A stretch of 64,000 nt of DNA from Octopus bimaculoides. Its lineage: Eukaryota. Made by a program: the position numbers and the translations under genes. How positions within the stretch are numbered: the stretch's first letter is position 1; every line of letters starts with the position of its first letter. Shown here piece by piece: positions 1,218 to 58,258 of the stretch. Where the stretch lies: contig NC_068998.1 in NCBI RefSeq assembly GCF_001194135.2, positions 13,721,846 through 13,785,845 of the forward strand, in the 5' to 3' direction. The notes beneath the pieces were generated by a model that was given only the letters and a program-made list of their open reading frames with translations, had not been told where the DNA came from and ran no database searches.

Positions 1218-1974
1218 CTGTCTTATGACAGAATGAATGCAGAAGGGAAAGAAAAAGGAAAAAAATAGATGGATGCTTTTGTTATGCAAAAGATTTGGAG
1301 GAAACAAAATGATCATTCAACACTTTTTTTATTTATTTGTGTTATACTTTCAATAAATCTTTTTTTTTTTTTTAGTATTTTTCATGTGATTGCATTCAAT
1401 GAATTTCAAGAATAAACTATTGTTCTGTATCCTTTAATAGCAAATAAATGAATAAATAAATAAAAATGTTCATAACATTGAAAATTGCATTACAAAAATA
1501 CTACTTGATCACCTCAATTTAAATTGCACAGGACAGCAGATAACATTTTATTTCTATTTGTTTCACTTCGTTGTTATAACAAAACACCAGCTGAACTTTG
1601 CAATGCATTTGTATTTATTCTTTATAAATCATTACATAACATAGGACACAATGCAAGGGGTTTTTTTTGTTTTTTTTTTTTTCTCATACAGGTACTAAAA
1701 AAAGCTAGTGTTTTGAATCAATATAAAAAAAAACCTGTTCACCTCAGTTCAGCTCCTGTTTCTATATTGTTAAGTGGAGAAAAGAAAACAAAAATGTTTG
1801 CTCTACTTAAAATAATAGTCCAGTAATTATAAGCCAATGAGGGAGTCTGTACATGGTCATTCAGCCTACTAGAAATAGCAGCAAAATCTCCTTCAAATCA
1901 CACCTTACTATCCGCTGTGTATGCCACACTTAGCTGGTTGCATTAAAGTAATATAAATTATCCAACCATAAGAT

Positions 1975-2190
1975 GGTGGGGTGGAAGCATGTGACTTGTG
2001 GTTTCGATTTCTGGAACACATGATGTATTGTGTCCTTGAGCAAGACACTTCATTTCATATTGCTCCAGTCCACTCAGCTGGCAAAAATGAATAACCCAGC
2101 AACAGACTCATGTCTCATCCAGGTGGGGAATATATATGCCATGAAACCAAGAAACTAACCCTTATGAATCAGTATGACTTGAGAAGGCAG
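1975..2190 (+). mobile_element. tRNA-derived SINE with GTGTCCTTGAGCAAGACAC core (related copy at ~12760-12980)
   Basis: Degenerate B-box GGTTTCGATTTC followed by the conserved core TGTGTCCTTGAGCAAGACACTT and GCTCCAGTCCACTCAGCTG. Confidence 0.65.
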
Positions 2191-2217
2191 CTAAAACAAA
2201 AGGTTGTGGGGCTAGGG

Positions 2218-2616
2218 GTATTGCAAAAGCCTGGTTGGAGGCCCAACATTCTGATTTCTTTTACAAGGCTTAGAAAAACTGAAGACCTGCTGTGAAAAGT
2301 GTGTGAATCTGAGAGGGGAATATGTTGAATGTAATCATAATTAACTGATCCTCCTGTATTTTCTTTTACCCAAAAATAGGAACTTTTCAGTACATCCTCA
2401 TATGTATAACAGAGAATGTGGTTTGTTTGTTTTTTAATTCTTTCCTCAAAGACATGAGCAAAACATGTGAAATGAAATAAAAGTTGTGGAATCAAACGTG
2501 AATCTTCACAGATCCAAATCATTTGGAATTTATCCTTACAGCATTTGTCATTTTCAGTTAATTCATGGTAGGATTGTATAAAATATATTTTAGATATTTT
2601 ACCAACGGCATATTTT
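2218..2616 (-). repeat. Left arm of a ~400-bp inverted duplication (partner 3743-4146)
   Basis: The reverse complement aligns along its whole length with 3743-4146. The ORF track shows the same peptide MIWICEDSRLIPQLLFHFTCFAHVFEER on opposite strands. Confidence 0.95.
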
Positions 2617-2642
2617 GAAAATATATTTACATAAATGTAAAC
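2540..2642 (-). CDS. Candidate coding exon (103 nt, phase 0-1)
   Basis: Acceptor TTCACTTTTATAG|G and donor GCT|GTAAGG. Open frame VYIYVNIFSKYAVGKISKIYFIQSYHELTENDKC, phase-compatible with both neighbours. Confidence 0.4.
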
Positions 2643-3955
2643 CTATAAAAGTGAATATGTGAAAAACAAAATAGGAATTTTGGAAAGAAGTTTCTATAAA
2701 ACTAGTTTTTAAACATCGAATGGCTATGGGGGTCCACTAGAATAAAATAGTAATCAAAGGGGTTCATAGATTTTTTTTTAAATGGTCGAGAACCCCTGAT
2801 CTAGTAGTTCTGCTAATTTACTACCTTAGATTGATACTTTTTACTGACCCCAAAAAGAAAAAACTGACCATCATAGGATTTGAACTCAGAACACAGAGAC
2901 TCAGAATAAGCACTGTGCTAATTCTCCACTTTATCCAGCCTAGAACACAAATAATCTACAGTAGATTTGAAATCATTATTTGTGAGCTGACACATAATCC
3001 AGTGTCTTATCTATTCAGCTATTTCACTACTGCCAAGTATTATAAATTACAGACGAAAATTCTCAATGATTTACTAGTATATCATATAAAACTTTATATC
3101 CTTTTTTAGCATAAAACTTTATATCCTTTTGATTAAATCCTCCAACTTCTCTTTTTTTTAATGAACTACAATCCATATAACTTATCAAAATGCTACTCTG
3201 TTGTTTCCAGCTAATGTTTTTTCGATTTTTCACTTTAATGAAATTTCATTTTTGTACTACAACATACTTCAATTTATTTCAAGTTTCATCCTCTTTATTG
3301 TATGATATATCTACATATAAACATTCTAATTTTCTTTTTGTTGTTGTTTGTAAATGTTCTTTATGTCGTAGCTGTTACTTCTATTTAAAACTTTCACTAA
3401 CGCATGGTTTCCACCATAAGTAATTTTGCAGTTTCATTTTTATCTTACTTAATATAGTTTCTCAAAATGCTACATTTGATATTCTATAGCTTTGGTTTTT
3501 GAAAATATATAATAATTTATCTTATCATCATCATTATCTTCTTATCATCATGCTGTTACATAGCAAAGTAGCAAAGACTTTCACTAAGAGATTCACTTAG
3601 ACTACCTCAGTTTATCTAACAAACTGTCAAGTTAGAACTACTTGCATTCATTTCATGATTGAGTTGTTAGAATTAGAGTAAGCTTATCCTTTTGTAAAAC
3701 AACAATTCAAACAATTTGCTATGCCATCAAGCATATAATGGTAAAATATGCCGTTGGTAAAATATCTAAAATACATTTTATACAATCCTACCATGAATTA
3801 ACTGAAAATGACAAATGCTGTAAGGATAAATTCCAAATGATTTGGATCTGTGAAGATTCACGTTTGATTCCACAACTTTTATTTCATTTCACATGTTTTG
3901 CTCATGTCTTTGAGGAAAGAATTTCAAAAAAGCAAACCACGTTCTCTGTTATACA

Positions 3956-4181
3956 TATGAGGATGTACTGTACTGAAAAGTCCCTGGTTTTGGGTAAAAG
4001 AAAATACAGGAGGATCAGTTAATTATGATTACATTCAACATATTCCCCTCTCAGATTCACACACTTTTCACAGCAGTTCTTCAGTTTTTCTAAGCCCTGT
4101 AAAAGAACTCAGAATGTTGGGCCTCCAACCAGACTTTTTGCAATACGCTTTAAGCCAGGAACTTTTCAGTACCCACTCATA
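3956..4181. mobile_element. Mariner-derived MITE (truncated second copy at 2218-2404)
   Basis: TA-flanked TIRs TA|TGAGGATGTACTG..AAAAGTCCCTGG and CCAGGAACTTTTCAGTACCCACTCA|TA. The interior encodes the mariner C-terminus AWLEAQHSDFF-QGLEKLKTCCEKCVNLRGEYVE. Confidence 0.8.
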
Positions 4182-4424
4182 TTTCCAATTATCAGACATA
4201 TTGCTTGACAGTAATTGTTCCCACTATGTTGCACTCTGAGCTCAAATCTCGCTGAGAACAACTCTGCATCCCATTCTTTTGAGTTTGATGAATTACAAGT
4301 TCTCTACTGAGGTGAACTCTTCTCTTTCTGTTCTCACTTATAGAATAAATCAGCTATAGCTAGACCTGAAGGCTGTTGGTACCCATTAGGTCTAAAAATG
4401 CCCCTGTTTGTTTTATTTAAGCCT

Positions 4425-5200
4425 TTCATTCCCTATGGAGCATAGGCCATAGATGACTTTTTTCCACTCTTTACAACTGTGAGCTGTCTTTTCGACTTTT
4501 CTCCAAAAGGATCTCAGCTTTTCCTATTCTACTTCAGTATCACTAGTTAAGGTTATCTCTACAGATTTTCTGAATAATAGAACACAGTATTGACTGATAA
4601 AAGTGTTGTAATAGCATTGCTAACATAATAGAACACAATATTGACAAATAACTGTAGAGATAACCTTAACAAATGATATAATAGCACTGCTGACACAATA
4701 GAACACAATATTGACTTTAAAAAAAAGTTTAATATACTTTGTAATATATTATGGTTGCATAATGAAATACAGTATCACTACACATCATTGATATTTTGGT
4801 ATCATGCCTCCAGTTATTTCAGAAAGGGAGTCAGTCTTATAGTTTCCCTTCAGATTTTGCTGCACCACCTCATATATTTCCCTGAGGGAAAGCCTCCCTC
4901 TCCCAGGTTTTGTTGGTTTTTGAATTGCCATTGATGCTTCTGCAACTTTGCTGTTGGCCCTACGCAGACTTAATTATATTTTTAGGAAGAGGTGATCCAT
5001 ATTAGTTTGCTCTCCGTCTCTTGACTTGTCTGACATGGGAGGCTCTACCAAGAGTTTGCACTACACTGGTGTAGCTCTCGGGGGTCACTGAAGAACATAA
5101 ACCAGTACACAACAGCAAGGCTTGGACATTGTGGTGGTAAAAATACTCGAGATACACTACCACTATAACTCCATTAAGAAGCTGGGCATCCAAAGCAAGA
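4425..5200 (-). mobile_element. RTE-LINE-derived bipartite element (5' region plus 3' end, interior missing)
   Basis: The 5' part (GGTAGAGCCTCCCATGTCAGACAAGTC; peptide SKVAEASMAIQKPTKPGRGRLSLREIYE) and the RTE-type 3' end TATGGCCTATGCTCCATAGGGA are homologous to 47040-47495. Confidence 0.6.
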
Positions 5201-12746: not shown

Positions 12747-13583
12747 TGTATATCATGGAGGCTATGAGATCATGGTTTCAGTTCTCAAACCGGGCATTGT
12801 ATTGCATTCTTGAACAAAACACTCCATTTCATGTTGCTCTATGATCATTTCATCATCTGACATGTGGTATGATGAGCACCGATAGAGGTATTGTCGATTT
12901 ATTGAAGGAAGTGAGCTTATGTGAATACAAACATTTGGTCACTATCAACAAATCATGTGTATGGTTGTTCAACAAAAAATTGCAGAAGCCTCATACCCTC
13001 ATACATCATTTAATAATAGGAGAGTTCCTAATCGGGCCTCACAGGTATCGTGATGCAAGCATGGAAAATAGAACTCAAAATATGGGTTTATGTATAGTTC
13101 TAATAATATTTAGACGAAGCAACAGAGTGACTGAAGGGCCAAGATCCCGGAAAGGATGATAAGAAAAGTCGACCTAGGCGGAATTTGAACTCTGAACAAA
13201 AGGTCGGACGAAATGCCGCTAAACATTTGGACCGGTGTGCTACCAATTCTGCCATCTTGCCGCCTTACCCTTTTGTAATAATCCTTTGTACTGGAGGCAC
13301 AAGGCCTCAAATTTGTCGGGTGGGGACTAGTCGATTATATCGACCCCCGGAAGGGATGAAAGGCAGAGTCGACCTCGGCGGAATTTGAACTCAGAACGTA
13401 GCGACAGGCAAAACACTGCTAAGCATTTCGTCCAGCGTGTTAACGAGTCTGCCAGCTCACCACCTTTTCCCTTCTGCAATATTAAGGGTTAATATGTTTG
13501 TTCGTTTCTTTTTTCTTCTCTCGCTTTTTCATTCTCTCATTGTATTAAATTTGGAAGTGAATAACATTCTTTTTTTTTTTCAG

Positions 13584-14505: not shown

Positions 14506-15302
14506 NNNNNNNNNNNNNNNNNNNNNNNNNNNNNNNNNNNNNNNNNNNNNNNNNNNNNNNNNNNNNNNNNNNNNNNNNNNNNNNNNNNNNNNNNNNNNNN
14601 NNNNNNNNNNNNNNNNNNNNNNNNNNNNNNNNNNNNNNNNNNNNNNNNNNNNNNNNNNNNNNNNNNNNNNNNNNNNNNNNNNNNNNNNNNNNNNNNNNNN
14701 NNNNNNNNNNNNNNNNNNNNNNNNNNNNNNNNNNNNNNNNNNNNNNNNNNNNNNNNNNNNNNNNNNNNNNNNNNNNNNNNNNNNNNNNNNNNNNNNNNNN
14801 NNNNNNNNNNNNNNNNNNNNNNNNNNNNNNNNNNNNNNNNNNNNNNNNNNNNNNNNNNNNNNNNNNNNNNNNNNNNNNNNNNNNNNNNNNNNNNNNNNNN
14901 NNNNNNNNNNNNNNNNNNNNNNNNNNNNNNNNNNNNNNNNNNNNNNNNNNNNNNNNNNNNNNNNNNNNNNNNNNNNNNNNNNNNNNNNNNNNNNNNNNNN
15001 NNNNNNNNNNNNNNNNNNNNNNNNNNNNNNNNNNNNNNNNNNNNNNNNNNNNNNNNNNNNNNNNNNNNNNNNNNNNNNNNNNNNNNNNNNNNNNNNNNNN
15101 NNNNNNNNNNNNNNNNNNNNNNNNNNNNNNNNNNNNNNNNNNNNNNNNNNNNNNNNNNNNNNNNNNNNNNNNNNNNNNNNNNNNNNNNNNNNNNNNNNNN
15201 NNNNNNNNNNNNNNNNNNNNNNNNNNNNNNNNNNNNNNNNNNNNNNNNNNNNNNNNNNNNNNNNNNNNNNNNNNNNNNNNNNNNNNNNNNNNNNNNNNNN
15301 NN
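14506..15302. other. Assembly gap (others: 16191-16378, 28385-28898, 35899-35908, 37678-38338, 38839-39615, 45858-46400, 49866-49875, 54350-54888, 55635-56221, 61999-62713)
   Basis: Runs of N, mostly bordered by microsatellites. Confidence 1.
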
Positions 15303-17974: not shown

Positions 17975-19130
17975 CAGATAAGTAAGTATAACTCTTTATA
18001 AATTGACAAATTGACTCTTCTACCAGTACTTGATTGCAGGCAAATGATGGGTTCCAAACATGAGCAATATGCTGTTATTGAGTTCTTCCCGATGGAGGTC
18101 TTCAAGCTACCTTCCAGTGAAGGTCACGGTTTCTTTTTTAAAAAAACAAAGAGGCACTATTGACAAGAGCAATTTGGACAGTTGTACGGAGAAGTTTAAA
18201 AAAGGAAGACCACCGTTGACAACAAACCACACAGGAAACTATCAATTGGAAGTGGAAGAATTGATTCACGCGGAGAGACAAGTCACAATCCATGAGCTGG
18301 TCGCACAACTGGACTGTGGTTATAATACATTACAGAAGGCACCGGAAGATTAGATATCAGAAAAGTGTGTACGAAGTGGATACCTCTCCAGCTGATATCC
18401 GATTTGAAAGAATGATAGATGAAAGTTTGTTCTGATCTGTTGGACGTGCTGAAGTCTATAAAGACACAATTTTTTCCACTCTGGTGACAAGAGATGAAAT
18501 GTTGCTTTATAGTAATGATCTAGTATCGAAGGCTCAATCTACGGAATTGCGTCTATCCTCTTTGGCAAAGCTTAATAAGTTCAAGAGCTATTGATCGGCA
18601 CAGGCATCGTGATGACTGATTTTGGCGGATGTAAAAAAGGCATCGTTCTCCGTGATTTACTGGAATGTAACTATGCTGTGAAGGGTGAGCAGCAAATTAA
18701 GACACTCAAAATGTTCAGAGAAGCCATTGAGAAGAAAAGACCAAACTAAAATCTGACAACGATCCACATTCACCATGGGAATGCATGACCGAATGCAACA
18801 AATCAGGAATCGACAAATCAATTCGCTCAGTGTCGCCTCTCAACCGCACAGCCCATATCTGGTAACTTTCAACTTCAAACTGTGCAATCCAATGAAGAAC
18901 AGTCTTCGGACACAACAGACGGAGTAGAAGTAATTAAACCTGTACAAAACTGAATGTTTTCCAAGAGGACTCGAGAGTTGTGTTCACGATGGCGCAAATG
19001 CAGTGCTTGACATGGAGTCTACCTTAAATAGTACCTTTGTAGAGAAGAAGAGTTACTCTATTAACATGTAAAATTTAAACAACCCAATGAAAAAAATCTT
19101 CCCACTTGGCATTACTTCCAGTATAATCGT
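17975..19130 (+). mobile_element. Decayed mariner (DD34D) transposon
   Basis: Remnant motifs KHEQYAVIEF, VTIHELVAQL, VTRDE (~18485), HHGNA*P (~18770), SPYL-GNFQLQ (~18850) and RWRKC...GVYLK* (~19000), with many stops and frameshifts. Confidence 0.8.
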
Positions 19131-20949: not shown

Positions 20950-23865
20950 TCGAATCTAGAACGGTACGCAATGAACAAAACAGATGTTGCTCAAATAAGT
21001 ATCCTGTAGAAAAACAAGAAGAATGAAATGGCCGGACTGCGTTGGGATCCTGATTAGTTTACTCAATGTGCAAAAGCCATATATACTCCTCTGTTTGCAA
21101 GCTCTTTTCTACATACCAAGCATTATTCACAAGTGAGGCTTGTTGACTGGACAAGCGTACTTAGAACTATGGAAAATCATGAGGACAGCATAGAACATAA
21201 TAGGACAGTATTGTGCAAGATAACAAGAAAAACAAATAGAAACACTGTGGATCAGAAACGTGAAGAACAATCGAAAAGAAATTTACGGTACTATTTTGAA
21301 GTACTGAAAAAACTTGTAACTGGAATAAAGGTTTTAAGTAAAAGGAGTTAGACATTTAGAAGTCACAAGAAGAGAAGAAATAAGGAAAACTTCGTGGGGA
21401 CTATTGAACTGATTTCAGGGTTCTACCCATTACTTTTTTTGCATAAGAAGCTAGAGAAATGTAACAATAAAAAAGTAAATACTACTTATTTTGCGAAAAC
21501 CATGTATAAAAAATAAATAGAAATCATTGGAAAACATGAGCAAGGTGAAATTGTAAATTGAATTAGCAACAAGACATCCATTAAGGATCACTATTATCCC
21601 TTTTAAAAAACAAATTATATTCTATCGTGATTGAAGAGTGCTTAAATTCAATATTCCTATTGCTTCTAGAAAATGGTATTACAACGAAGCTTCGAATGAC
21701 AAAATTGTGTATGAATATGTTGTTAGAAAGACGAAATATTGTATTTTGTAAATTGTGGTTCATGTAGAATGCATTCCAAAACCTGTTTGAAACTAAATAT
21801 TATATAAATTAAATATTATGTTTTATTTCAGGCATGCTTATAAATAATCACTAATTTTCATTCCCACATAACTTGAAAACTATACGTTATAGAATTTCTA
21901 TTCACACCAGTGATATTGAGATATGGAGTAACCAATTACAGCAATTGAAAATTAAAATCTAAGACGCACTGATTAAATTCTATTTTCTATCATTGTTGAC
22001 TCTACACCTAACCTCATACATGTTGACTAACTAGTGATTGTGATTCGATACTGTTATAATAACATAAAACCCTTGCGTTTACCAATGTAAAACCATTCAT
22101 CCATAACTTAGTTCAACAAAATACAAATCCTAAGTTAACCCTTTACTTGAAAATATTTGTAATTAACCCTACGATAACTGATCTACCGTGAAAGGCTCAG
22201 AGATAGGGACCGGGGCCTAGAGCCTAAGATATAAACGAAGAATTCTCTGTAGGCAAAGGTCATGAGCACGCATTGATCACGTCCCTGTCCTTTGTAAACA
22301 TCACCCGTCCCTACTACTGATTAAACAGTCCGGGGAGAACCTTGGATGTGGCCGTCGTCGGTGCATTCTCTGATGGTCCGCAGAAGAGTAGCGAACCCGA
22401 TTGTATAGAAGAAGAAAAAGTCGTAACAAACTTTAAAAATATTAATAAGCAGTCTTTAAAAAATATTAACAGTTTTGTAGACTAGGAACCATGTACAGCT
22501 CATTCTTTTCACTTTGTTGGAGAAAAGACAATGTCTGCTGTACCTGGAGTTGTTGAATATTTTGATATTTTGCAGGTGCTGTATATTTTTTTTTTCTAGA
22601 TCTCTACGAAGATAGGGAATTTTAAACAGAAAGAGCAGAAAGGCTTAAGTGTAACTAGAAGTTCTGCACACTACGAAGCAGTCTGAGCAATTACAAACGG
22701 TTACATGGTTATATTAAAGATTAGCAAATATATTTTTAAAACGAAGCAGAGAAGCTTCAATTTAAATGAGATACAAAGAATTTATACCACAAATTGGTTA
22801 CAGTTGGAATATATTGTTTCAGCAGTCGTTTGGGACAAGTCTTGGAGCGTTTCAACGAAGCAAGAAACTCAAAATATTTAAACTTTTGTTTGTTAAGAAC
22901 AACGAGAAAATTCAGATAAAATGATTGCATACTATCAACCAGAAGCAAAAGTTTTGTGTGAAGATATCACCTCAAGTTATTCTGGTGCTTCCGAACGCAT
23001 TGTTACAAAGAAATTTTCAGATAGAACAAGTGGTAATGCTCCTTTGAGAGAAACTAAGAATTTTAGAATAGAAGTTCTCAATCAATTCATTGATTGACTC
23101 ATAATCCAATTACGTAAGAGCATTGAGATAAATGAGCTGATTGCGGATAGGTTCAAGTTACTCTAAGAATTAATTAAAAAATTCTGAAACTGATGAAGAC
23201 AATATTAAACTTGTAATATCATATCACAAAAATGATATTTACCACAAATTGGTACACGAGTGTAAACAATTTAGAGAATATTTGTACCCAAGGAAATCCC
23301 AGAACACAGAATAAAATGCGCCGTCCAAAATGAAACACAGATATTCCTCAGTTTATTTGTGAGAACCGCCTCACTGAAGTGATCTTTAATACTGATTTCA
23401 AATTTTGGCACAAGGCCAGCAATTTCGAGGGCGGGGACAAGTCGATTACATCGACCCCAGCGTATAAACTGATACCTATTTTATCGACCCCGAAAGGATG
23501 AAAGGCAAAGTCAACCTAGACGGAATTTGAACTCATAACGTAAAGACGGACGAAATGCCGCTAAGCATTTCGTCCGTCTATTCTTTTCTACTCTAGGCAC
23601 AAGGCCCGAATTGTTGGTGGAAGGAGGCAGTCGATTAGACCTTCCCCAGTACGCAACTGGTACTTAATTTATCGACCCCGAAAGGATGAAAGGCAAAGTC
23701 GGCCTCGGTGGAATTTGAATTCAGAACGTTAAGACAGACGAAACACCGTTAGCGTGCTAACGTTTCTGCCAGCTCGCCGGTAGTGATCCTTTACATTACT
23801 ATTGTATATAAGCCGTATTTGACAGTGCCTTTTATGAGCTGTGAAGGGGAAAGAATTTCTCAAAC
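20950..23865 (+). mobile_element. Decayed hAT (ZMYM1-like) transposase with nested insertions
   Basis: TTF-type region DWTSVLRTMENHEDSIEH (21133-21351), SIIVDSTP (~21990), CTAHSFHFV (~22492), LSVTRSSAHYEAV (~22645) and LTVPFMSCEGERIS (~23820). SINEs are inserted at 23395-23780. Confidence 0.8.
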
Positions 23866-23866
23866 C

Positions 23867-24268
23867 TATCCTTTTCAGAGAACAAATTATATTCTATCGT
23901 GATTGAAGAGTGCTTAAATTCAATATTCCTATTGCCTCTAGAAAATGGTATTACAACGAAGCTTCGAATGACAAAATTGTGTATGAATATGTTGTTATAA
24001 AGACAAAATATTGTATTTTGTAAATTGTGGTTCATGTATGCTGCATTCCAAAACCTGTTTGAAATTAAATATTATATTAATTAAATATTATGTTTTATTT
24101 CAAGCATGCTTATAAATAATCACTAATTTTCATTCTCACATAACTTGAAAACTATAAGTTATAGAATTTCTATTCACACCAGCGATATTGAGATATGAAG
24201 TAACCAAGTACAGCAATTACAGCAATTGAAAATTAAAATCTAAGACGCACTGATTAAATTCTATTTTC
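23867..24268 (+). repeat. Second copy of a ~400-bp segment (first copy 21595-21987)
   Basis: Direct alignment with high identity. The ORF track shows twin peptides MNHNLQNTIF... Confidence 0.95.
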
Positions 24269-25224: not shown

Positions 25225-26175
25225 TATTGACAGTCAATTTCTTTATTAGCCATGAGGTAGAGAAAAAGAGGGGACGATACGAGGACAGACAAAACAAACA
25301 TTGGGGTCAGGGGATCGAATGAGACGAAACGCATGAATAAACAAACAATTAAAATATATACAATTAAATGAGAATGAGTAATTTACACAAAATGAAGCGG
25401 AGGACGCGGTCGACCCCACAAACCACATATTCACACTGAAAACTTTGCTTTGTCCTTTTATTGGTTCTCGTTTTAGGTCGGTTTTTTCAATCGCAACATA
25501 CTTGCTACAGACTTCCATCTTTTACGAAACACACTTTGCGACAGACATTTCCTCTCCAGCTTTATTTTTCGTTTCATGTGGAAAACGAAAAAGTCGATTA
25601 TCTCGAGACTGGAGATGAACATGCCTGTTGCAATTCCTTTCACTCTCGTTTTCCATACTACCTCTTTCGCAACAGCAACTTCCGAGAGAAAACAGGCTCG
25701 CTCCTCTCTATTCAGGGAGGGCGGCGGAACGATCTTAATTACAGATTCGCTCGACAGTTGTACTCTTCTCGAATGCGCCAGCAGGTGTTCGACATAAGAC
25801 CAGAGTTCAGTCACCTTGGGACATTGCACAATCACGTGCAGGACACTTTCACTGTCCTGCTCGCATCTTGCACAAACCGGCGAAGGCGCCTATCGTTGAA
25901 AGGATTATATATGTATTATTCACGTAATAATTAAATCATAAATTATGTACTTTATTGTGTCATGTGCATGATCCCCCGGTCCATGAAACCGGTCAGTGAT
26001 GCGGGAAAAGATTGGGGATCGTTGATATACAATACATGAACATGCCTATAACCCGAACATAAATCGTGGGAGTTGGACGGTGGAGGAGTAATTTTGGACC
26101 TACTTTCGCATTTGGATTAAACCATTTATCAGCTCTACATGATCCGATGGACAACTACCTTAAGACCTACAACTT
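25225..26175 (-). mobile_element. L1/Tx1-clade LINE 3' fragment
   Basis: ORF2 C-terminal zinc knuckle CARCEQDSESVLHVIVQCPKVTELW (CCHC at 25821-25874), open to the stop at 25473, then a 3' UTR with AATAAA. Confidence 0.75.
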
Positions 26176-32439: not shown

Positions 32440-34030
32440 GTATCTTTTCTTCTTAGGGTCTACATTTAGGAATTCAGTGTTCTTCCTTTTCTTTGTATGT
32501 GTGGTTTCGACTTCTTGTAACGGTGTTGGAACCTGAAAAGTGTCATATAGCTAATCCATTGGTATTTCTACTCCTGTTGGTTCCTTTTCTATGACTCTTT
32601 CCTTAAGCTGATTTCTCTGTCTCCTTTCCATTCCATTTCTGCTTCTTACACCATACATCATTCTTCCTATGTATGTTACAATTCTTCTCAGTATTGTTTG
32701 CCATTTTTGTACATTCTTGCATATACCTTATCAGCGATTCTAAAGAATGTTGGCAAGTCTTTACTTGTACGTATTTTGTCTTCACTGGTAACAGTTTATC
32801 GAATAGTGACTTCACCTTTCTGGTAAACATTAATTCTCCTGGTGAACTTCCTTCTGGCGTATTTAGGTTCAGAGTTACCCTGTATACCCTTAAGAATTGT
32901 TGGATCGCGACCTCGTCCGGGCTTCTTTATTAGCTTTCTTTAAGGCTCTCTTAAAAGTGTTCACGAACCGTTCGGCCCTTCCATTCTATCTAGAGTGATG
33001 CGGTGCTATAGTTTTATGGTCTAACGTGAACATCTCGCAAAATCTTTTAAACACACAGGATACAAACTGTTCCTTTAACAGAGACAATTATATCCGGTAC
33101 ACCAAATCTTGCGAACGGCTCGCGTAAGAAGTGTATTACCGTATATGAGGTTAGTCGTTTACACCCCGCGACATCAGGCCATTTTGTGTAGCTGTCCACT
33201 ACTATTAAGTAATAATATCCATTTACCGGGCCTGCAAAATCGATATGCAATCTGGACCATGGTATTTTCACTTCCAGCCAAGGTCCACAATTTGTAGTAG
33301 GTAGTTTCACTGCCAGCGCACATCCCCTGCAGCCTTTTACCAGGTCTTCAACTTCTTTGTACATGTTTAGCTAACGTACGAAACTTCGCATCAGCGCTTT
33401 CATTCCAGAGATGCCTGGGTGTCCCACATGCAACTCTTTTAGCGTTCTCTTCTGTAATGTCTGTGCTATAACCACCCTCTGAGCGTACATTAGTACACCA
33501 TCACATATAAAGTACACGTTCACATCTTCGCGGTTATTTGCATCAGACCTTTCTTTATTTCCTTTTGCTGACCACAGTTCTCTTTTTGTCTCATTAATAA
33601 ATTTATCATTTCCCGCATTTCTTATTATTTCTTCCAAAATTACAGGTAGTTCTCGCACGATGTTCCATATCACGTTTTCATTTTTGTTTCAGTTCATCGA
33701 CCTCGTTCGACTACTCTGTTTACGCTGTTGCACAAAGCGTTTATGGATGTATCCCATAAATTAAACTTCTCCATACATTCGGTGCCAAAGAAATTCATGG
33801 ATTTTTTCAACACAAACATTCACTTTTTTGGTTCGACTTTTGACAATTATATTATAAACGCGTTCGCCCGTGAAATGAAATTTCGTTCCCGTAACACCGT
33901 ACGCTATTTTGTTTGAACTACATAATTTTGGTTTACCCATTTGTTCCCATGTTTTCTCATTTATGATTGTGATATCACTTCCCGTGTCTAATTGCATTTT
34001 GACACTAGTATTTTCAATTCTCACATTCAC
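32440..34030 (-). mobile_element. Ty3/Gypsy (K02A2.6-like) pol remnant: protease joined to integrase, RT/RNase H absent
   Basis: LDTGS protease (33761-34030), HHCC region LHVGHPG...CRGC, HIDFAGP, VVDSYTKWPD, FARFGVPDIIVS and NGRAERFVNTFK. Confidence 0.9.
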
Positions 34031-45257: not shown

Positions 45258-45600
45258 ATGTCCAGAAGAAAGGGTGAGAGAGGTTTGACTAGTTTCCAGG
45301 ATTGTATCGAAACAGAGGAAAATAGCTTAGGATGGTATGCAAAAAATACCGTGGAACCATTGTTGAAACATGTGAAGAATTTGACAAATTAAGTAAATAT
45401 AAGGACCTAGAAATTGAAATACAAAAGATGAGGCATCTTAAAGCGAGAACTGTTCCTGTTATTGTAGGTGTCCTAGGTATGATAAAAAAAAAAGGATGTC
45501 AGAAACATCTAGATAACATCCCAGGAGCACCATATCTCAGAGAAATCCAAAAGATTGTGCTGCCGACGTCCTTAGAAAAACCCTATCCATTTAAATGTTT
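45258..45600 (+). mobile_element. Internally deleted R4/Dong-like LINE fragment next to (TAA)n(GAA)n
   Basis: RRKGERGLTSFQDCIETEENSL is joined to KLSKYKDLEIEIQKMRHLKARTVPVIVGVLGMI...EIQKIVL (RLE C-terminus). Confidence 0.75.
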
Positions 45601-46400
45601 GTATTGTATTACATGAAGACATTTCATTACAGCCCCTGCCACTCCCCCCTCCCCCCAGCTTTCAGTCATACTGTAACATCTCTTATCCTTCACTCGCCTT
45701 ACGACGCTGGGTAAGTCACGGCAAGTGATTGTAACAAAGATGCAGATTAAAAGTAAAAAATCATGATAATAATAACAATAAAAGTTTCAAATTTTGGTAC
45801 AGGGCCAGCAGTTTTTGAGGGGAGAAGTCAATTACATCTTCCTCAGTACTTGGCTGGNNNNNNNNNNNNNNNNNNNNNNNNNNNNNNNNNNNNNNNNNNN
45901 NNNNNNNNNNNNNNNNNNNNNNNNNNNNNNNNNNNNNNNNNNNNNNNNNNNNNNNNNNNNNNNNNNNNNNNNNNNNNNNNNNNNNNNNNNNNNNNNNNNN
46001 NNNNNNNNNNNNNNNNNNNNNNNNNNNNNNNNNNNNNNNNNNNNNNNNNNNNNNNNNNNNNNNNNNNNNNNNNNNNNNNNNNNNNNNNNNNNNNNNNNNN
46101 NNNNNNNNNNNNNNNNNNNNNNNNNNNNNNNNNNNNNNNNNNNNNNNNNNNNNNNNNNNNNNNNNNNNNNNNNNNNNNNNNNNNNNNNNNNNNNNNNNNN
46201 NNNNNNNNNNNNNNNNNNNNNNNNNNNNNNNNNNNNNNNNNNNNNNNNNNNNNNNNNNNNNNNNNNNNNNNNNNNNNNNNNNNNNNNNNNNNNNNNNNNN
46301 NNNNNNNNNNNNNNNNNNNNNNNNNNNNNNNNNNNNNNNNNNNNNNNNNNNNNNNNNNNNNNNNNNNNNNNNNNNNNNNNNNNNNNNNNNNNNNNNNNNN

Positions 46401-57961: not shown

Positions 57962-58258
57962 ATTGTCTGTTCCTTCTCGAGCCATGCCTGGCTCGTAAAG
58001 GCCGGTTTCCCGGTTTCATTGGCGTATAGGTTCCCCACCTGGACGGGACGCCGGTCAGTCGCAGGTGAGCTGCTAGATGAAGGAGGAAAGAAAATTGTAG
58101 CGAAAAAGTCAGCGGAAGTTCACCATTACCTTCTGCCGGCACCGCATGGAGCTTAGGTGTTTCGCTCATAAACACACACACATTGCTCGGTTTGAGATTC
58201 GAACCCGCGATCCCTCGACCACAAGTCCGCTGCCCTAACCACTAGGCCATGTGCCTAC
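57962..58258 (-). mobile_element. tRNA-derived SINE with the same head as 30718-31100 but a different tail
   Basis: Head GGCCTAGTGGTTAGGGCAGCGGACTTGTGG...GGTTCGAATCTC. Tail CTGCGACTGACCGGCGTCCCGTCCAGGTGGGG. Confidence 0.8.

What the first reader, a model, noticed from the sequence alone, without database searches (positions are those of the whole stretch)
2218..4181. 400-bp inverted duplication that would base-pair with a candidate exon in pre-mRNA (possible ADAR editing substrate)
The arms 2218-2616 and 3743-4146 are highly similar and 1.1 kb apart. They include ~210 bp of non-MITE flank, so this is a local inverted duplication rather than two MITE insertions. The left arm covers most of candidate exon 2540-2642 and its 5' splice site. 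The pre-mRNA could form a long duplex over the exon. Coleoids are known for extensive ADAR A-to-I recoding, so this could drive editing or exon skipping.
Basis: partly seen in the sequence, partly recalled or inferred. Interest (0 to 1): 0.7.

Follow-up and report, generated by a model that had tools for sequence, protein, structure and literature searches.

The report
Inverted duplication carrying a mariner MITE
The 400-bp inverted repeat is real, but it is a decaying local duplication of AT-rich non-coding octopus DNA plus a dead mariner transposon fragment. Nothing supports an exon there, and such hairpin-forming repeats are common in octopus genomes.

Summary
Observation confirmed. Bases 2218-2616 and 3743-4146 are reverse complements, 95.3% identical over 405 columns and 1,126 bp apart. 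They are the only inverted pair above 90% identity within 5 kb in the window.

Anatomy: the outer ~183 bp of each arm is a mariner-derived MITE. The right copy (3958-4179) is complete, with both terminal inverted repeats and TA duplications. The left copy lacks its last 33 nt. The inner ~215 bp of each arm is unique AT-rich sequence. Homology stops sharply at all four arm ends, and none coincides with a transposon end. Both copies have since decayed about equally.

The functional reading is not supported. The "exon" 2540-2642(-) is one of 21 motif-level candidates in the window and has 22% G+C. Its only open frame has no true homologue among 1.84 billion representative proteins. Transcription and editing cannot be tested with the tools here.

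If the locus is transcribed, the arms would form a ~390-bp near-perfect duplex (MFE -890 versus -402 kcal/mol for shuffles). That is a generic hyper-editing substrate. About 0.44% of the Octopus bimaculoides genome lies in comparable structures. Ordinary; low interest.

The parts
2218..2616 (.). Left arm of the inverted duplication, inferred to be the derived copy
   Evidence: blastn 95.3% over 405 columns to 4146-3743; alignment. No significant homology continues beyond either end.
3743..4146 (.). Right arm of the inverted duplication, inferred to be the source copy
   Evidence: It continues outward into the intact end of the MITE (4147-4179), which the left arm lacks.
3958..4179 (-). Complete mariner-derived MITE (222 bp). 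It is flanked by TA at 3956-3957 and 4180-4181. The transposase-sense strand is minus.
   Evidence: 21-nt terminal inverted repeats at 3970-3990 and 4152-4172, 90% complementary. The whole element matches L001 394-606 at 77%. Its two ends match the two ends of a ~1.3-kb mariner in L003: 607-766 at 88.8% and 1872-1901 at 90%. The sense translation keeps the mariner transposase C-terminus QGLEKLK..CEKCVNLRGEYVE*.
2218..2400 (+). Truncated copy of the same MITE (183 bp) with TA at 2401-2402. The last 33 nt, including one terminal inverted repeat, are missing.
   Evidence: 84.5% to L003 768-588 and 77.7% to L001 558-377. It has the same internal deletion junction as the right copy. 2177-2217 versus rc(4147-4187) scores no better than shuffles: 6.0 against a mean of 6.1.
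2403..2616 (.). Non-MITE part of the left arm: unique AT-rich sequence (28.5% G+C)
   Evidence: No other copy in the window. No homology to L001-L003 beyond chance. No protein homologues.
3743..3955 (.). Non-MITE part of the right arm
2617..3742 (.). Spacer or loop (1,126 bp, 28.5% G+C), containing short decayed repeat fragments
   Evidence: (weak hits of 2854-2909 to SINE-like sequence elsewhere in the window). No long terminal repeats of its own.
2540..2642 (-).
   Evidence: Pyrimidine-rich YAG acceptor and GTAAGG donor, with one open frame. It is one of 21 such segments in the window. 22% G+C. No homologue.
2172..2642 (-). 157-codon stop-to-stop open frame spanning the flank and the antisense of the MITE; judged non-coding
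   Evidence: Third longest in the window. Reached by 3 of 300 shuffles of 8.5 kb. Its only real protein hits (P0001, P0002) cover the MITE-antisense part. The frame is broken by indels in the right arm.
3964..3968 (.). 5-bp tandem duplication (GTACT) next to the MITE end, present in the right copy only
   Evidence: Absent from the left copy and from L001 and L003, so it arose after the duplication.

Best explanation
A segment of about 400 bp was copied once, in inverted orientation, about 1.1 kb away. The segment held about 215 bp of unique AT-rich non-coding DNA and most of an adjacent, already inserted mariner-derived MITE. The event was a non-transposon process such as template switching or break repair.

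The right copy is the source. It alone keeps the complete MITE, with both terminal inverted repeats and TA target-site duplications. The left copy stops 33 nt short of the MITE end. Both copies have since accumulated changes at similar rates, which points to neutral decay. Neither encodes protein.

The only predictable activity is structural. If the locus lies inside any transcript, on either strand, the arms pair into a ~390-bp nearly perfect duplex. ADAR would then hyper-edit it promiscuously, as it does the very many neighbouring inverted repeats in octopus non-coding RNA.

Shown: the repeat, its anatomy, the mariner origin of the MITE, the sharp boundaries, the balanced decay and the in-silico duplex. 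Inferred: the direction and mechanism of the duplication, the lack of specific function, and any editing.
For: - Repeat: 95.3% identity over 405 columns.
- The MITE is defined by 21-nt terminal inverted repeats and TA flanks (sequence).
- Mariner origin: its ends match the two ends of a ~1.3-kb element in L003. That element's ORFs hit PF17906 HTH_48 (7.6e-12) and PF01359 Transposase_1 (7.9e-7), both above their cut-offs. The window copies retain the transposase C-terminal codons.
- Same MITE, same TA, same flank in both arms.
- Beyond 2218/4146 and 2616/3743, alignment scores equal those of shuffled sequence.
- MITE and flank diverge at rates that do not differ significantly (4.9% versus 2.8%, p = 0.31).
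- With L001 and L003 as outgroups, 4 changes are derived in the right copy and 5 in the left.
- No Pfam, Rfam or tRNA signal in the arms. No true protein homologue of the non-MITE frame.
- Duplex: MFE -890.5 kcal/mol, against -402 +/- 14 for shuffles and -429 with one arm flipped. Perfect helices reach 181 bp.
- Commonness: in O. bimaculoides, 4.4e-3 of random 50-mers have a >=95% inverted match within 2 kb, and most hyper-editing lies in such non-coding pairs (PMC5625713).
Against: - Genome-wide copy number of the 215-bp flank could not be measured. No cephalopod genome is searchable here, so a low-copy composite repeat family is not excluded.
- The differences are unevenly spread: 14 events in 2218-2435 against 1 in 2436-2616. 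The longest clean run is 149 bp (P = 0.016). That hints at later arm-to-arm gene conversion or at constraint.
- Loss of the left MITE end could also be a later deletion, which would leave the direction of copying open.
- No junction microhomology that would identify the mechanism was found.
- Transcription status is unknown.
Confidence: 0.6

Rival explanations
1. The two arms are separate insertions of one composite repeat family, an element X that carries a nested MITE. An example would be 5'-truncated retroelement copies that share a 3' end at 2616/3743, with the left copy truncated at 2218.
For: Both arms share one exact boundary (2616/3743) and differ at the other, which is the pattern of 5'-truncated retrocopies. 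The window is packed with SINE, LINE and LTR debris.
Against: No third copy of the flank exists in 64 kb. There is no tail or target-site duplication at the shared end. No reverse-transcriptase or other transposon domain lies in the sequence that would be the body of X, right of 4182. Two members of an apparently low-copy family landing 1.1 kb apart is unlikely. The two MITE copies are closer to each other (~95%) than to L003 (85-89%).
Confidence: 0.15
2. The whole 2218-4181 unit is a non-autonomous Tc1/mariner element with about 400-bp terminal inverted repeats (Tc7-like or foldback-like), and its left tip has been lost.
For: The right outer end is a genuine mariner terminal repeat followed by TA. 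The long arms are inverted, with the mariner ends pointing outward.
Against: The left outer end has no terminal repeat and no TA; the score equals that of shuffles. The inner half of the arms is not mariner sequence. No other copy is seen.
Confidence: 0.07
3. One reading: the left arm overlaps a real minus-strand exon, and the right arm acts as an editing-complementary sequence that drives ADAR recoding or exon skipping.
For: Splice-like motifs and one open frame at 2540-2642(-). A very stable predicted duplex covers 75% of it and the donor site. The taxon is an octopod. The inner 181 bp, which contains the candidate, is the best-conserved part of the arms.
Against: There are 21 equally good motif candidates in the window. 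The candidate has 22% G+C. The frame continues through the donor site into MITE antisense. There are no homologues in 5.8 billion or 1.84 billion protein sets; the three hits are tandem-repeat artefacts at 23-32% identity. There is no Pfam match. Long perfect duplexes give promiscuous hyper-editing rather than selective recoding (PMC5625713).
Confidence: 0.05
4. Assembly artefact: one arm was wrongly placed or duplicated by a short-read assembler or gap closer.
For: The scaffold is a gap-ridden draft with 11 N runs totalling 5,341 N. The inner 149-181 bp are identical between arms, a situation that is hard for de Bruijn assemblers.
Against: The arms differ at 15 positions, including 3 indels, so they are two distinct sequences. 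Changes are derived on both copies. There is no gap within 10 kb.
Confidence: 0.05
5. The locus is a hairpin-RNA (hpRNA) gene processed into endogenous siRNAs.
For: The architecture of ~400-bp arms and a ~1-kb loop resembles Drosophila hpRNA loci (own knowledge). The predicted hairpin is very stable.
Against: No promoter or transcript evidence. The arms derive from a MITE and anonymous AT-rich DNA, not from a target gene. No relatives were found.
Confidence: 0.03

Closest known systems
Neighbouring inverted repeat pairs that form intramolecular dsRNA and are hyper-edited by ADAR (inverted Alu pairs in primates; inverted repeats in Octopus bimaculoides; Porath et al. 2017, PMC5625713)
   Same: Two inverted copies at 95% identity lie within 2 kb. 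The predicted duplex is long and nearly perfect. The context is non-coding and rich in repeats.
   Different: Here the pair arose by duplicating a segment that includes unique flank, not from two insertions of one repeat family. Transcription and editing have not been shown.
Mariner-derived MITEs such as human MADE1 from Hsmar1 (own knowledge)
   Same: A short internal-deletion derivative keeps both terminal inverted repeats and TA duplications. A full-length parent type with HTH_48 and Transposase_1 domains was found in L003.
   Different: This MITE keeps about 30 C-terminal codons of the transposase. It is only the passenger in the duplication, not its cause.
Caenorhabditis elegans Tc7, a 921-bp non-autonomous element with 345-bp inverted repeats whose tips match Tc1 (own knowledge)
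   Same: Long inverted arms with a Tc1/mariner-type tip at the right outer end.
   Different: The left tip and its TA are absent. There is no evidence of mobility or of other copies.
Intronic editing-complementary sequences (for example the GluA2 Q/R site) and Drosophila hpRNA loci (own knowledge)
   Same: An inverted copy lies about 1 kb from the sequence it would pair with.
   Different: Those pair with proven exons or genes and are conserved across species. Here the exon has no support and conservation could not be tested.

Membership tests
Tc1/mariner-derived MITE (outer half of each arm) | Terminal inverted repeats at both ends | tested here: met
   Right copy: 3970-3990 and 4152-4172, 21 nt, 90% complementary. 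The core motif occurs 4 times against 0.15 expected. The left copy keeps only one end.
Tc1/mariner-derived MITE (outer half of each arm) | TA target-site duplication | tested here: met
   TA at 3956-3957 and 4180-4181 flanks the right copy. TA at 2401-2402 lies at the retained end of the left copy. The exact tip is uncertain by a few bases because the flanks are AT-rich.
Tc1/mariner-derived MITE (outer half of each arm) | Derivable from an autonomous element by internal deletion | tested here: met
   Window 3974-4132 matches L003 607-766 (88.8%) and 4143-4172 matches L003 1872-1901 (90%). About 1.1 kb of transposase gene lies between them in L003. The L003 ORFs hit HTH_48 and Transposase_1 above their cut-offs.
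Tc1/mariner-derived MITE (outer half of each arm) | Many dispersed copies in the host genome | not testable with these tools
   Only the two copies occur in the window. Related copies exist in three contigs from other data sets. No cephalopod genome is searchable.
Segmental (non-transposon) inverted duplication | Duplicate boundaries do not coincide with mobile-element ends, and homology stops abruptly | tested here: met
   The outer boundary lies 33 nt inside the MITE and the inner boundary lies in anonymous sequence. Flank alignments score the same as shuffles.
Segmental (non-transposon) inverted duplication | All parts of the duplicate are the same age (uniform divergence) | tested here: inconclusive
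   MITE versus flank is not significantly different (p = 0.31), but a 149-bp clean run has P = 0.016.
Protein-coding exon (2540-2642, minus strand) | Open frame bounded by splice motifs | tested here: met
   Met, but not specific: 21 such segments occur in 64 kb.
Protein-coding exon (2540-2642, minus strand) | Homology to a known or predicted protein | tested here: not met
   No hit covers it. The exhaustive HMMER search gave only tandem-repeat artefacts matching residues 46-79, outside the exon's 34 codons. No Pfam match.
Protein-coding exon (2540-2642, minus strand) | Spliced transcript evidence | not testable with these tools
   No RNA-seq access. Look-ups of the arm ORFs in assembled public runs found nothing.
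ADAR hyper-editing substrate | Long, nearly perfect intramolecular duplex | tested here: met
   About 390 arm-to-arm pairs and perfect helices of 89-181 bp. MFE -890 versus -402 kcal/mol for shuffles, z = -36. This is an in-silico result only.
ADAR hyper-editing substrate | Both arms on one transcript, with clustered A-to-G mismatches in RNA | not testable with these tools
   No expression data are available.
Long-inverted-repeat Tc1/mariner element (Tc7-like) | Transposase-binding tips and a TA duplication at both outer ends of the unit | tested here: not met
   The right tip is present. The left tip is absent: 2177-2217 versus rc(4147-4187) scores at shuffle level.

The most novel reading that the evidence does not exclude
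The near-identity of the inner 181 bp (2436-2616 / 3743-3923; 1 difference against 14 in the outer 218 bp) is maintained by selection for a hairpin within a neural transcript. Such a hairpin could mask a small exon or splice site, or act as a regulated ADAR or siRNA substrate. That would make this a young, lineage-specific structural RNA switch built by inverted duplication.
Probability: 0.04. Interest if true: 0.55.

Novelty: new member of a known kind. Interest (0 to 1): 0.15.

Why it matters
It matters little on its own. It is one well-resolved example of how octopus genomes gain hairpin-forming inverted repeats. Here the route was segmental duplication of a piece that happened to include a mariner MITE, not two transposon insertions. 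Such loci feed the very large pool of hyper-edited non-coding dsRNA in cephalopods. It would become interesting only if RNA data showed that the locus is spliced or is specifically processed.

Tried and rejected
- Exact-product look-ups of both arm ORFs in public assemblies found nothing on record.
- Rfam (E <= 1) and tRNA scans over the region gave only two sub-threshold chance hits outside the arms.
- Extending homology beyond the arm ends: the weak 71% pair 2198-2228 / 4136-4166 and the MAFFT-aligned outer flanks are no better than shuffles. Rejected.
- A lax-scoring BLAST suggested that L001 shares about 130 bp of flank with the window. Flank-only Smith-Waterman scores are within the shuffle range: 15 against 11.2 +/- 1.6, maximum 17. 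So L001 shares only the MITE. Rejected as an orthologous locus.
- The 157-codon open frame as a gene: no Pfam match, its hits fall only on MITE antisense, and it is frameshifted in the right arm. Rejected.
- The three hits for the non-MITE frame in the representative search are summed weak matches to 18-residue tandem repeats or unrelated domains. Rejected.
Selected ORFs right of the right arm show no transposon domain.
- Searching for host-gene exons: nothing gene-like appeared among G+C-rich or motif-bounded ORFs. I ran no further search on a 5-kb concatenate of junk ORFs.
- Looking for the sources of L001-L003 in the literature found nothing.

Full report
**1.
- blastn of 2100-4300 against the window returns one strong reverse-complement match. 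It pairs 2218-2616 with 4146-3743 at 95.3% identity over 405 columns.
- The repeat finder reports the same pair as three gapless blocks of 93-96%.
- The pairwise alignment shows 12 substitutions and 3 indels.
- The spacer is 1,126 bp.
- No other copy of either arm occurs in the 64-kb window.
- In a self-comparison of the whole window, this is the only inverted pair within 5 kb that exceeds 87% identity. The others are SINE pairs at 70-87%.
- The window is a draft eukaryotic scaffold with 11 N runs, about 34% G+C, microsatellites, SINEs and retroelement debris.
- An LTR-retroelement integrase ORF has its best named hits in Octopus bimaculoides and O. sinensis. The "coleoid" premise is therefore reasonable.

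**2. Anatomy of the arms.**
- The outer half of each arm is a mariner-derived MITE.
- In the right arm, a 21-nt inverted repeat (GTACTGAAAAGTCCCTGGTTT / AAGCCAGGAACTTTTCAGTAC) lies at 3970-3990 and 4152-4172.
- With a few more matching bases, this delimits a 222-bp element at 3958-4179, flanked by TA on both sides.
- A protein search with the long open frame of the left arm found two predicted ORFs. They match only this part.
- Their contigs show the relationship:
  - L001 and L002 contain the whole short element at 77% identity.
  - In L003 the same two ends (88.8% and 90%) bracket about 1.1 kb of transposase gene.
- The L003 reading frames hit the Mos1-type HTH_48 domain (7.6e-12) and Transposase_1 (7.9e-7), both above Pfam's cut-offs.
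- Read on the sense strand, both window copies still show the end of the transposase, QGLEKLK..CEKCVNLRGEYVE followed by a stop. L003 has QGLEKLKVHCHKCVNLRGEYVE.
- The inner half of each arm (2403-2616 and 3743-3955) is AT-rich sequence (28.5% G+C). It has no relative in the window, in L001-L003, or in the protein databases.

**3. One duplication, not two insertions.**
- Both arms have the same MITE at the same TA in the same flank, with the same internal deletion junction.
- Homology ends sharply at all four boundaries. Local alignment of the sequences beyond 2218/4146 and beyond 2616/3743 scores no better than shuffled controls.
- The outer boundary lies 33 nt inside the MITE. The right copy is therefore a complete element, and the left copy lacks one terminal repeat. 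This makes the right copy the likely source and the left copy the derived one.
- Divergence of the MITE part (4.9%) and the flank part (2.8%) does not differ significantly (p = 0.31).
- With L001 and L003 as outgroups, 4 changes are derived on the right copy and 5 on the left. That is what neutral decay of both copies after a single event predicts.
- I found no junction microhomology that identifies the mechanism. Template switching or break repair is an inference.

**4. Rival structural readings.**
- *A composite repeat family.* A retroelement 3' end carrying a nested MITE would also give one shared boundary and one variable boundary. Against it:
  - there is no third copy in 64 kb;
  - there is no tail or target-site duplication;
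  - there is no transposon domain in the presumed body to the right;
  - two members of a rare family are unlikely to land 1.1 kb apart.
  
  It cannot be excluded without a genome-wide copy count.
- *A Tc7-like long-inverted-repeat mariner element.* This fails the test that both tips carry the terminal repeat and TA.
- *Misassembly.* This is unlikely because the arms differ at 15 sites, with derived changes on both. There is also no gap within 10 kb.

**5. The exon.**
- The segment 2540-2642 on the minus strand has a pyrimidine-rich YAG acceptor, a GTAAGG donor and one open frame.
- A simple filter with those criteria finds 21 such segments in this largely repeat-derived window.
- The segment has 22% G+C.
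- Its open frame does not stop at the donor. It continues for 157 codons through the flank and into the antisense of the MITE. An ORF of that length is reached by 3 of 300 shuffles of the local 8.5 kb.
- The frame is broken by indels in the right arm.
- It has no Pfam match.
- In the word-indexed search of 5.8 billion proteins, only the MITE-antisense part has hits.
- An exhaustive HMMER search of 1.84 billion representatives with the 80 non-MITE residues gave three hits. On inspection these are summed weak matches (23-32% identity) to tandem 18-residue repeats or unrelated proteins. They fall outside the 34 codons of the proposed exon.
- I conclude that nothing supports the exon beyond splice motifs.

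**6. What the structure could do.**
- Folding 2200-4200 as RNA gives -847 kcal/mol on the plus strand and -890 kcal/mol on the minus strand.
- About 390 pairs join the two arms, and perfect helices reach 149-181 bp.
- Shuffles give -402 +/- 14 kcal/mol. Flipping one arm gives -429 kcal/mol.
- Any transcript that includes both arms would therefore carry a long, almost perfect duplex. That is the classical substrate for promiscuous ADAR hyper-editing.
- Porath et al. (PMC5625713) reported three relevant points:
  - Most editing, even in cephalopods, lies in non-coding regions.
  - It is mostly driven by neighbouring inverted repeats.
  - In O. bimaculoides, 4.4e-3 of random 50-mers have a >=95% inverted match within 2 kb, the highest value among the species they studied.
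- Zhang et al. (PMC9989829) treat the same pairing of nearby inverted repeats as the conventional source of editing substrates.
- The locus is thus one of a very large class.
- Site-selective recoding in coleoids is associated with local, imperfect structures in and around exons rather than 400-bp perfect hairpins. This last point is from my own knowledge; the paper was not held.
- Transcription, editing and exon skipping cannot be tested with the tools available.

**7. Loose ends.**
- The differences between the arms are unevenly spread: 14 events in 2218-2435 against 1 in 2436-2616. The longest clean run is 149 bp (P = 0.016 under random placement). Arm-to-arm gene conversion is the simplest explanation. 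Selection for the duplex is the most novel reading that I cannot exclude.
- AAAATAT occurs both just after the left arm (2618-2624) and at the start of the right arm (3743-3749). Removing 2625-3749 would leave a spacerless palindrome centred on G2617. By a post-hoc estimate this has about a 0.002 chance, and I did not resolve it.

**8. Verdict.** The inverted duplication is real and cleanly defined. The exon and editing interpretation is unsupported. The object belongs to a known and abundant kind, so interest is low.

Noticed in passing
window 21595-21987 and 23867-24268: A direct repeat of about 400 bp at 93.5% identity, with starts 2,272 bp apart and two SINE copies between the repeats. Its size and identity are much like the inverted pair. 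It could be the LTRs of a small element or another local duplication.
   Followed up: partly
window 2618-2624 and 3743-3749: The heptamer AAAATAT follows the left arm after a single G, and it also starts the right arm. Deleting 2625-3749 would make the arms abut as a spacerless palindrome. This could be the footprint of a 1.1-kb insertion with a 7-bp duplication, or chance in AT-rich DNA.
   Followed up: partly
window 2436-2616 / 3743-3923: The inner 181 bp of the arms differ at one site only, while the outer 218 bp carry 14 events. The longest clean run is 149 bp (P = 0.016). Possible arm-to-arm gene conversion.
   Followed up: partly
window 3964-3968: A 5-bp tandem duplication (GTACT) lies at the MITE tip in the right copy only. 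The resulting TACTGTA resembles a mariner excision footprint (TA + 3 nt + TA) but is equally explained by slippage.
   Followed up: no
L003 603-1901 (ENA ERZ17095642 contig): A nearly full-length Mos1-type mariner lies in an AT-rich microsatellite context. It has several frameshifts, and its HTH_48, DDE and C-terminal pieces sit in different frames. It is the parent type of the window's MITE. The contig ends at the right terminal repeat.
   Followed up: partly
window 4538-4569 / 4647-4678 and 4576-4751: A small 32-nt inverted repeat (88%) with a 77-nt loop lies beside three degenerate ~55-nt direct repeats, about 400 bp right of the right arm. It may be another short hairpin-type element.
   Followed up: no
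window 1965-2192: A SINE-like element abuts the left arm 25 nt from its outer end. It has weak relatives at 57972-58049 and 12798-12839. It may have been involved in the loss of the left MITE tip.
   Followed up: partly
window 18048-18350 (+), 25476-25889 (-), 33047-33673 (-), 45332-45616 (+): Fragments of other mobile-element ORFs. By eye these are a mariner-like N-terminus, a LINE C-terminal zinc-knuckle region, and a retroelement tail. The LTR-retroelement integrase is confirmed by hits at up to 75% identity to Octopus proteins carrying PF00665 and PF17921. No convincing host-gene exon was seen anywhere in the window.
   Followed up: partly
window 14506-15302 and ten further N runs: Eleven assembly gaps (5,341 N), mostly next to CA/TA microsatellites. 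The scaffold is a short-read draft, so local structures need long-read confirmation.
   Followed up: no
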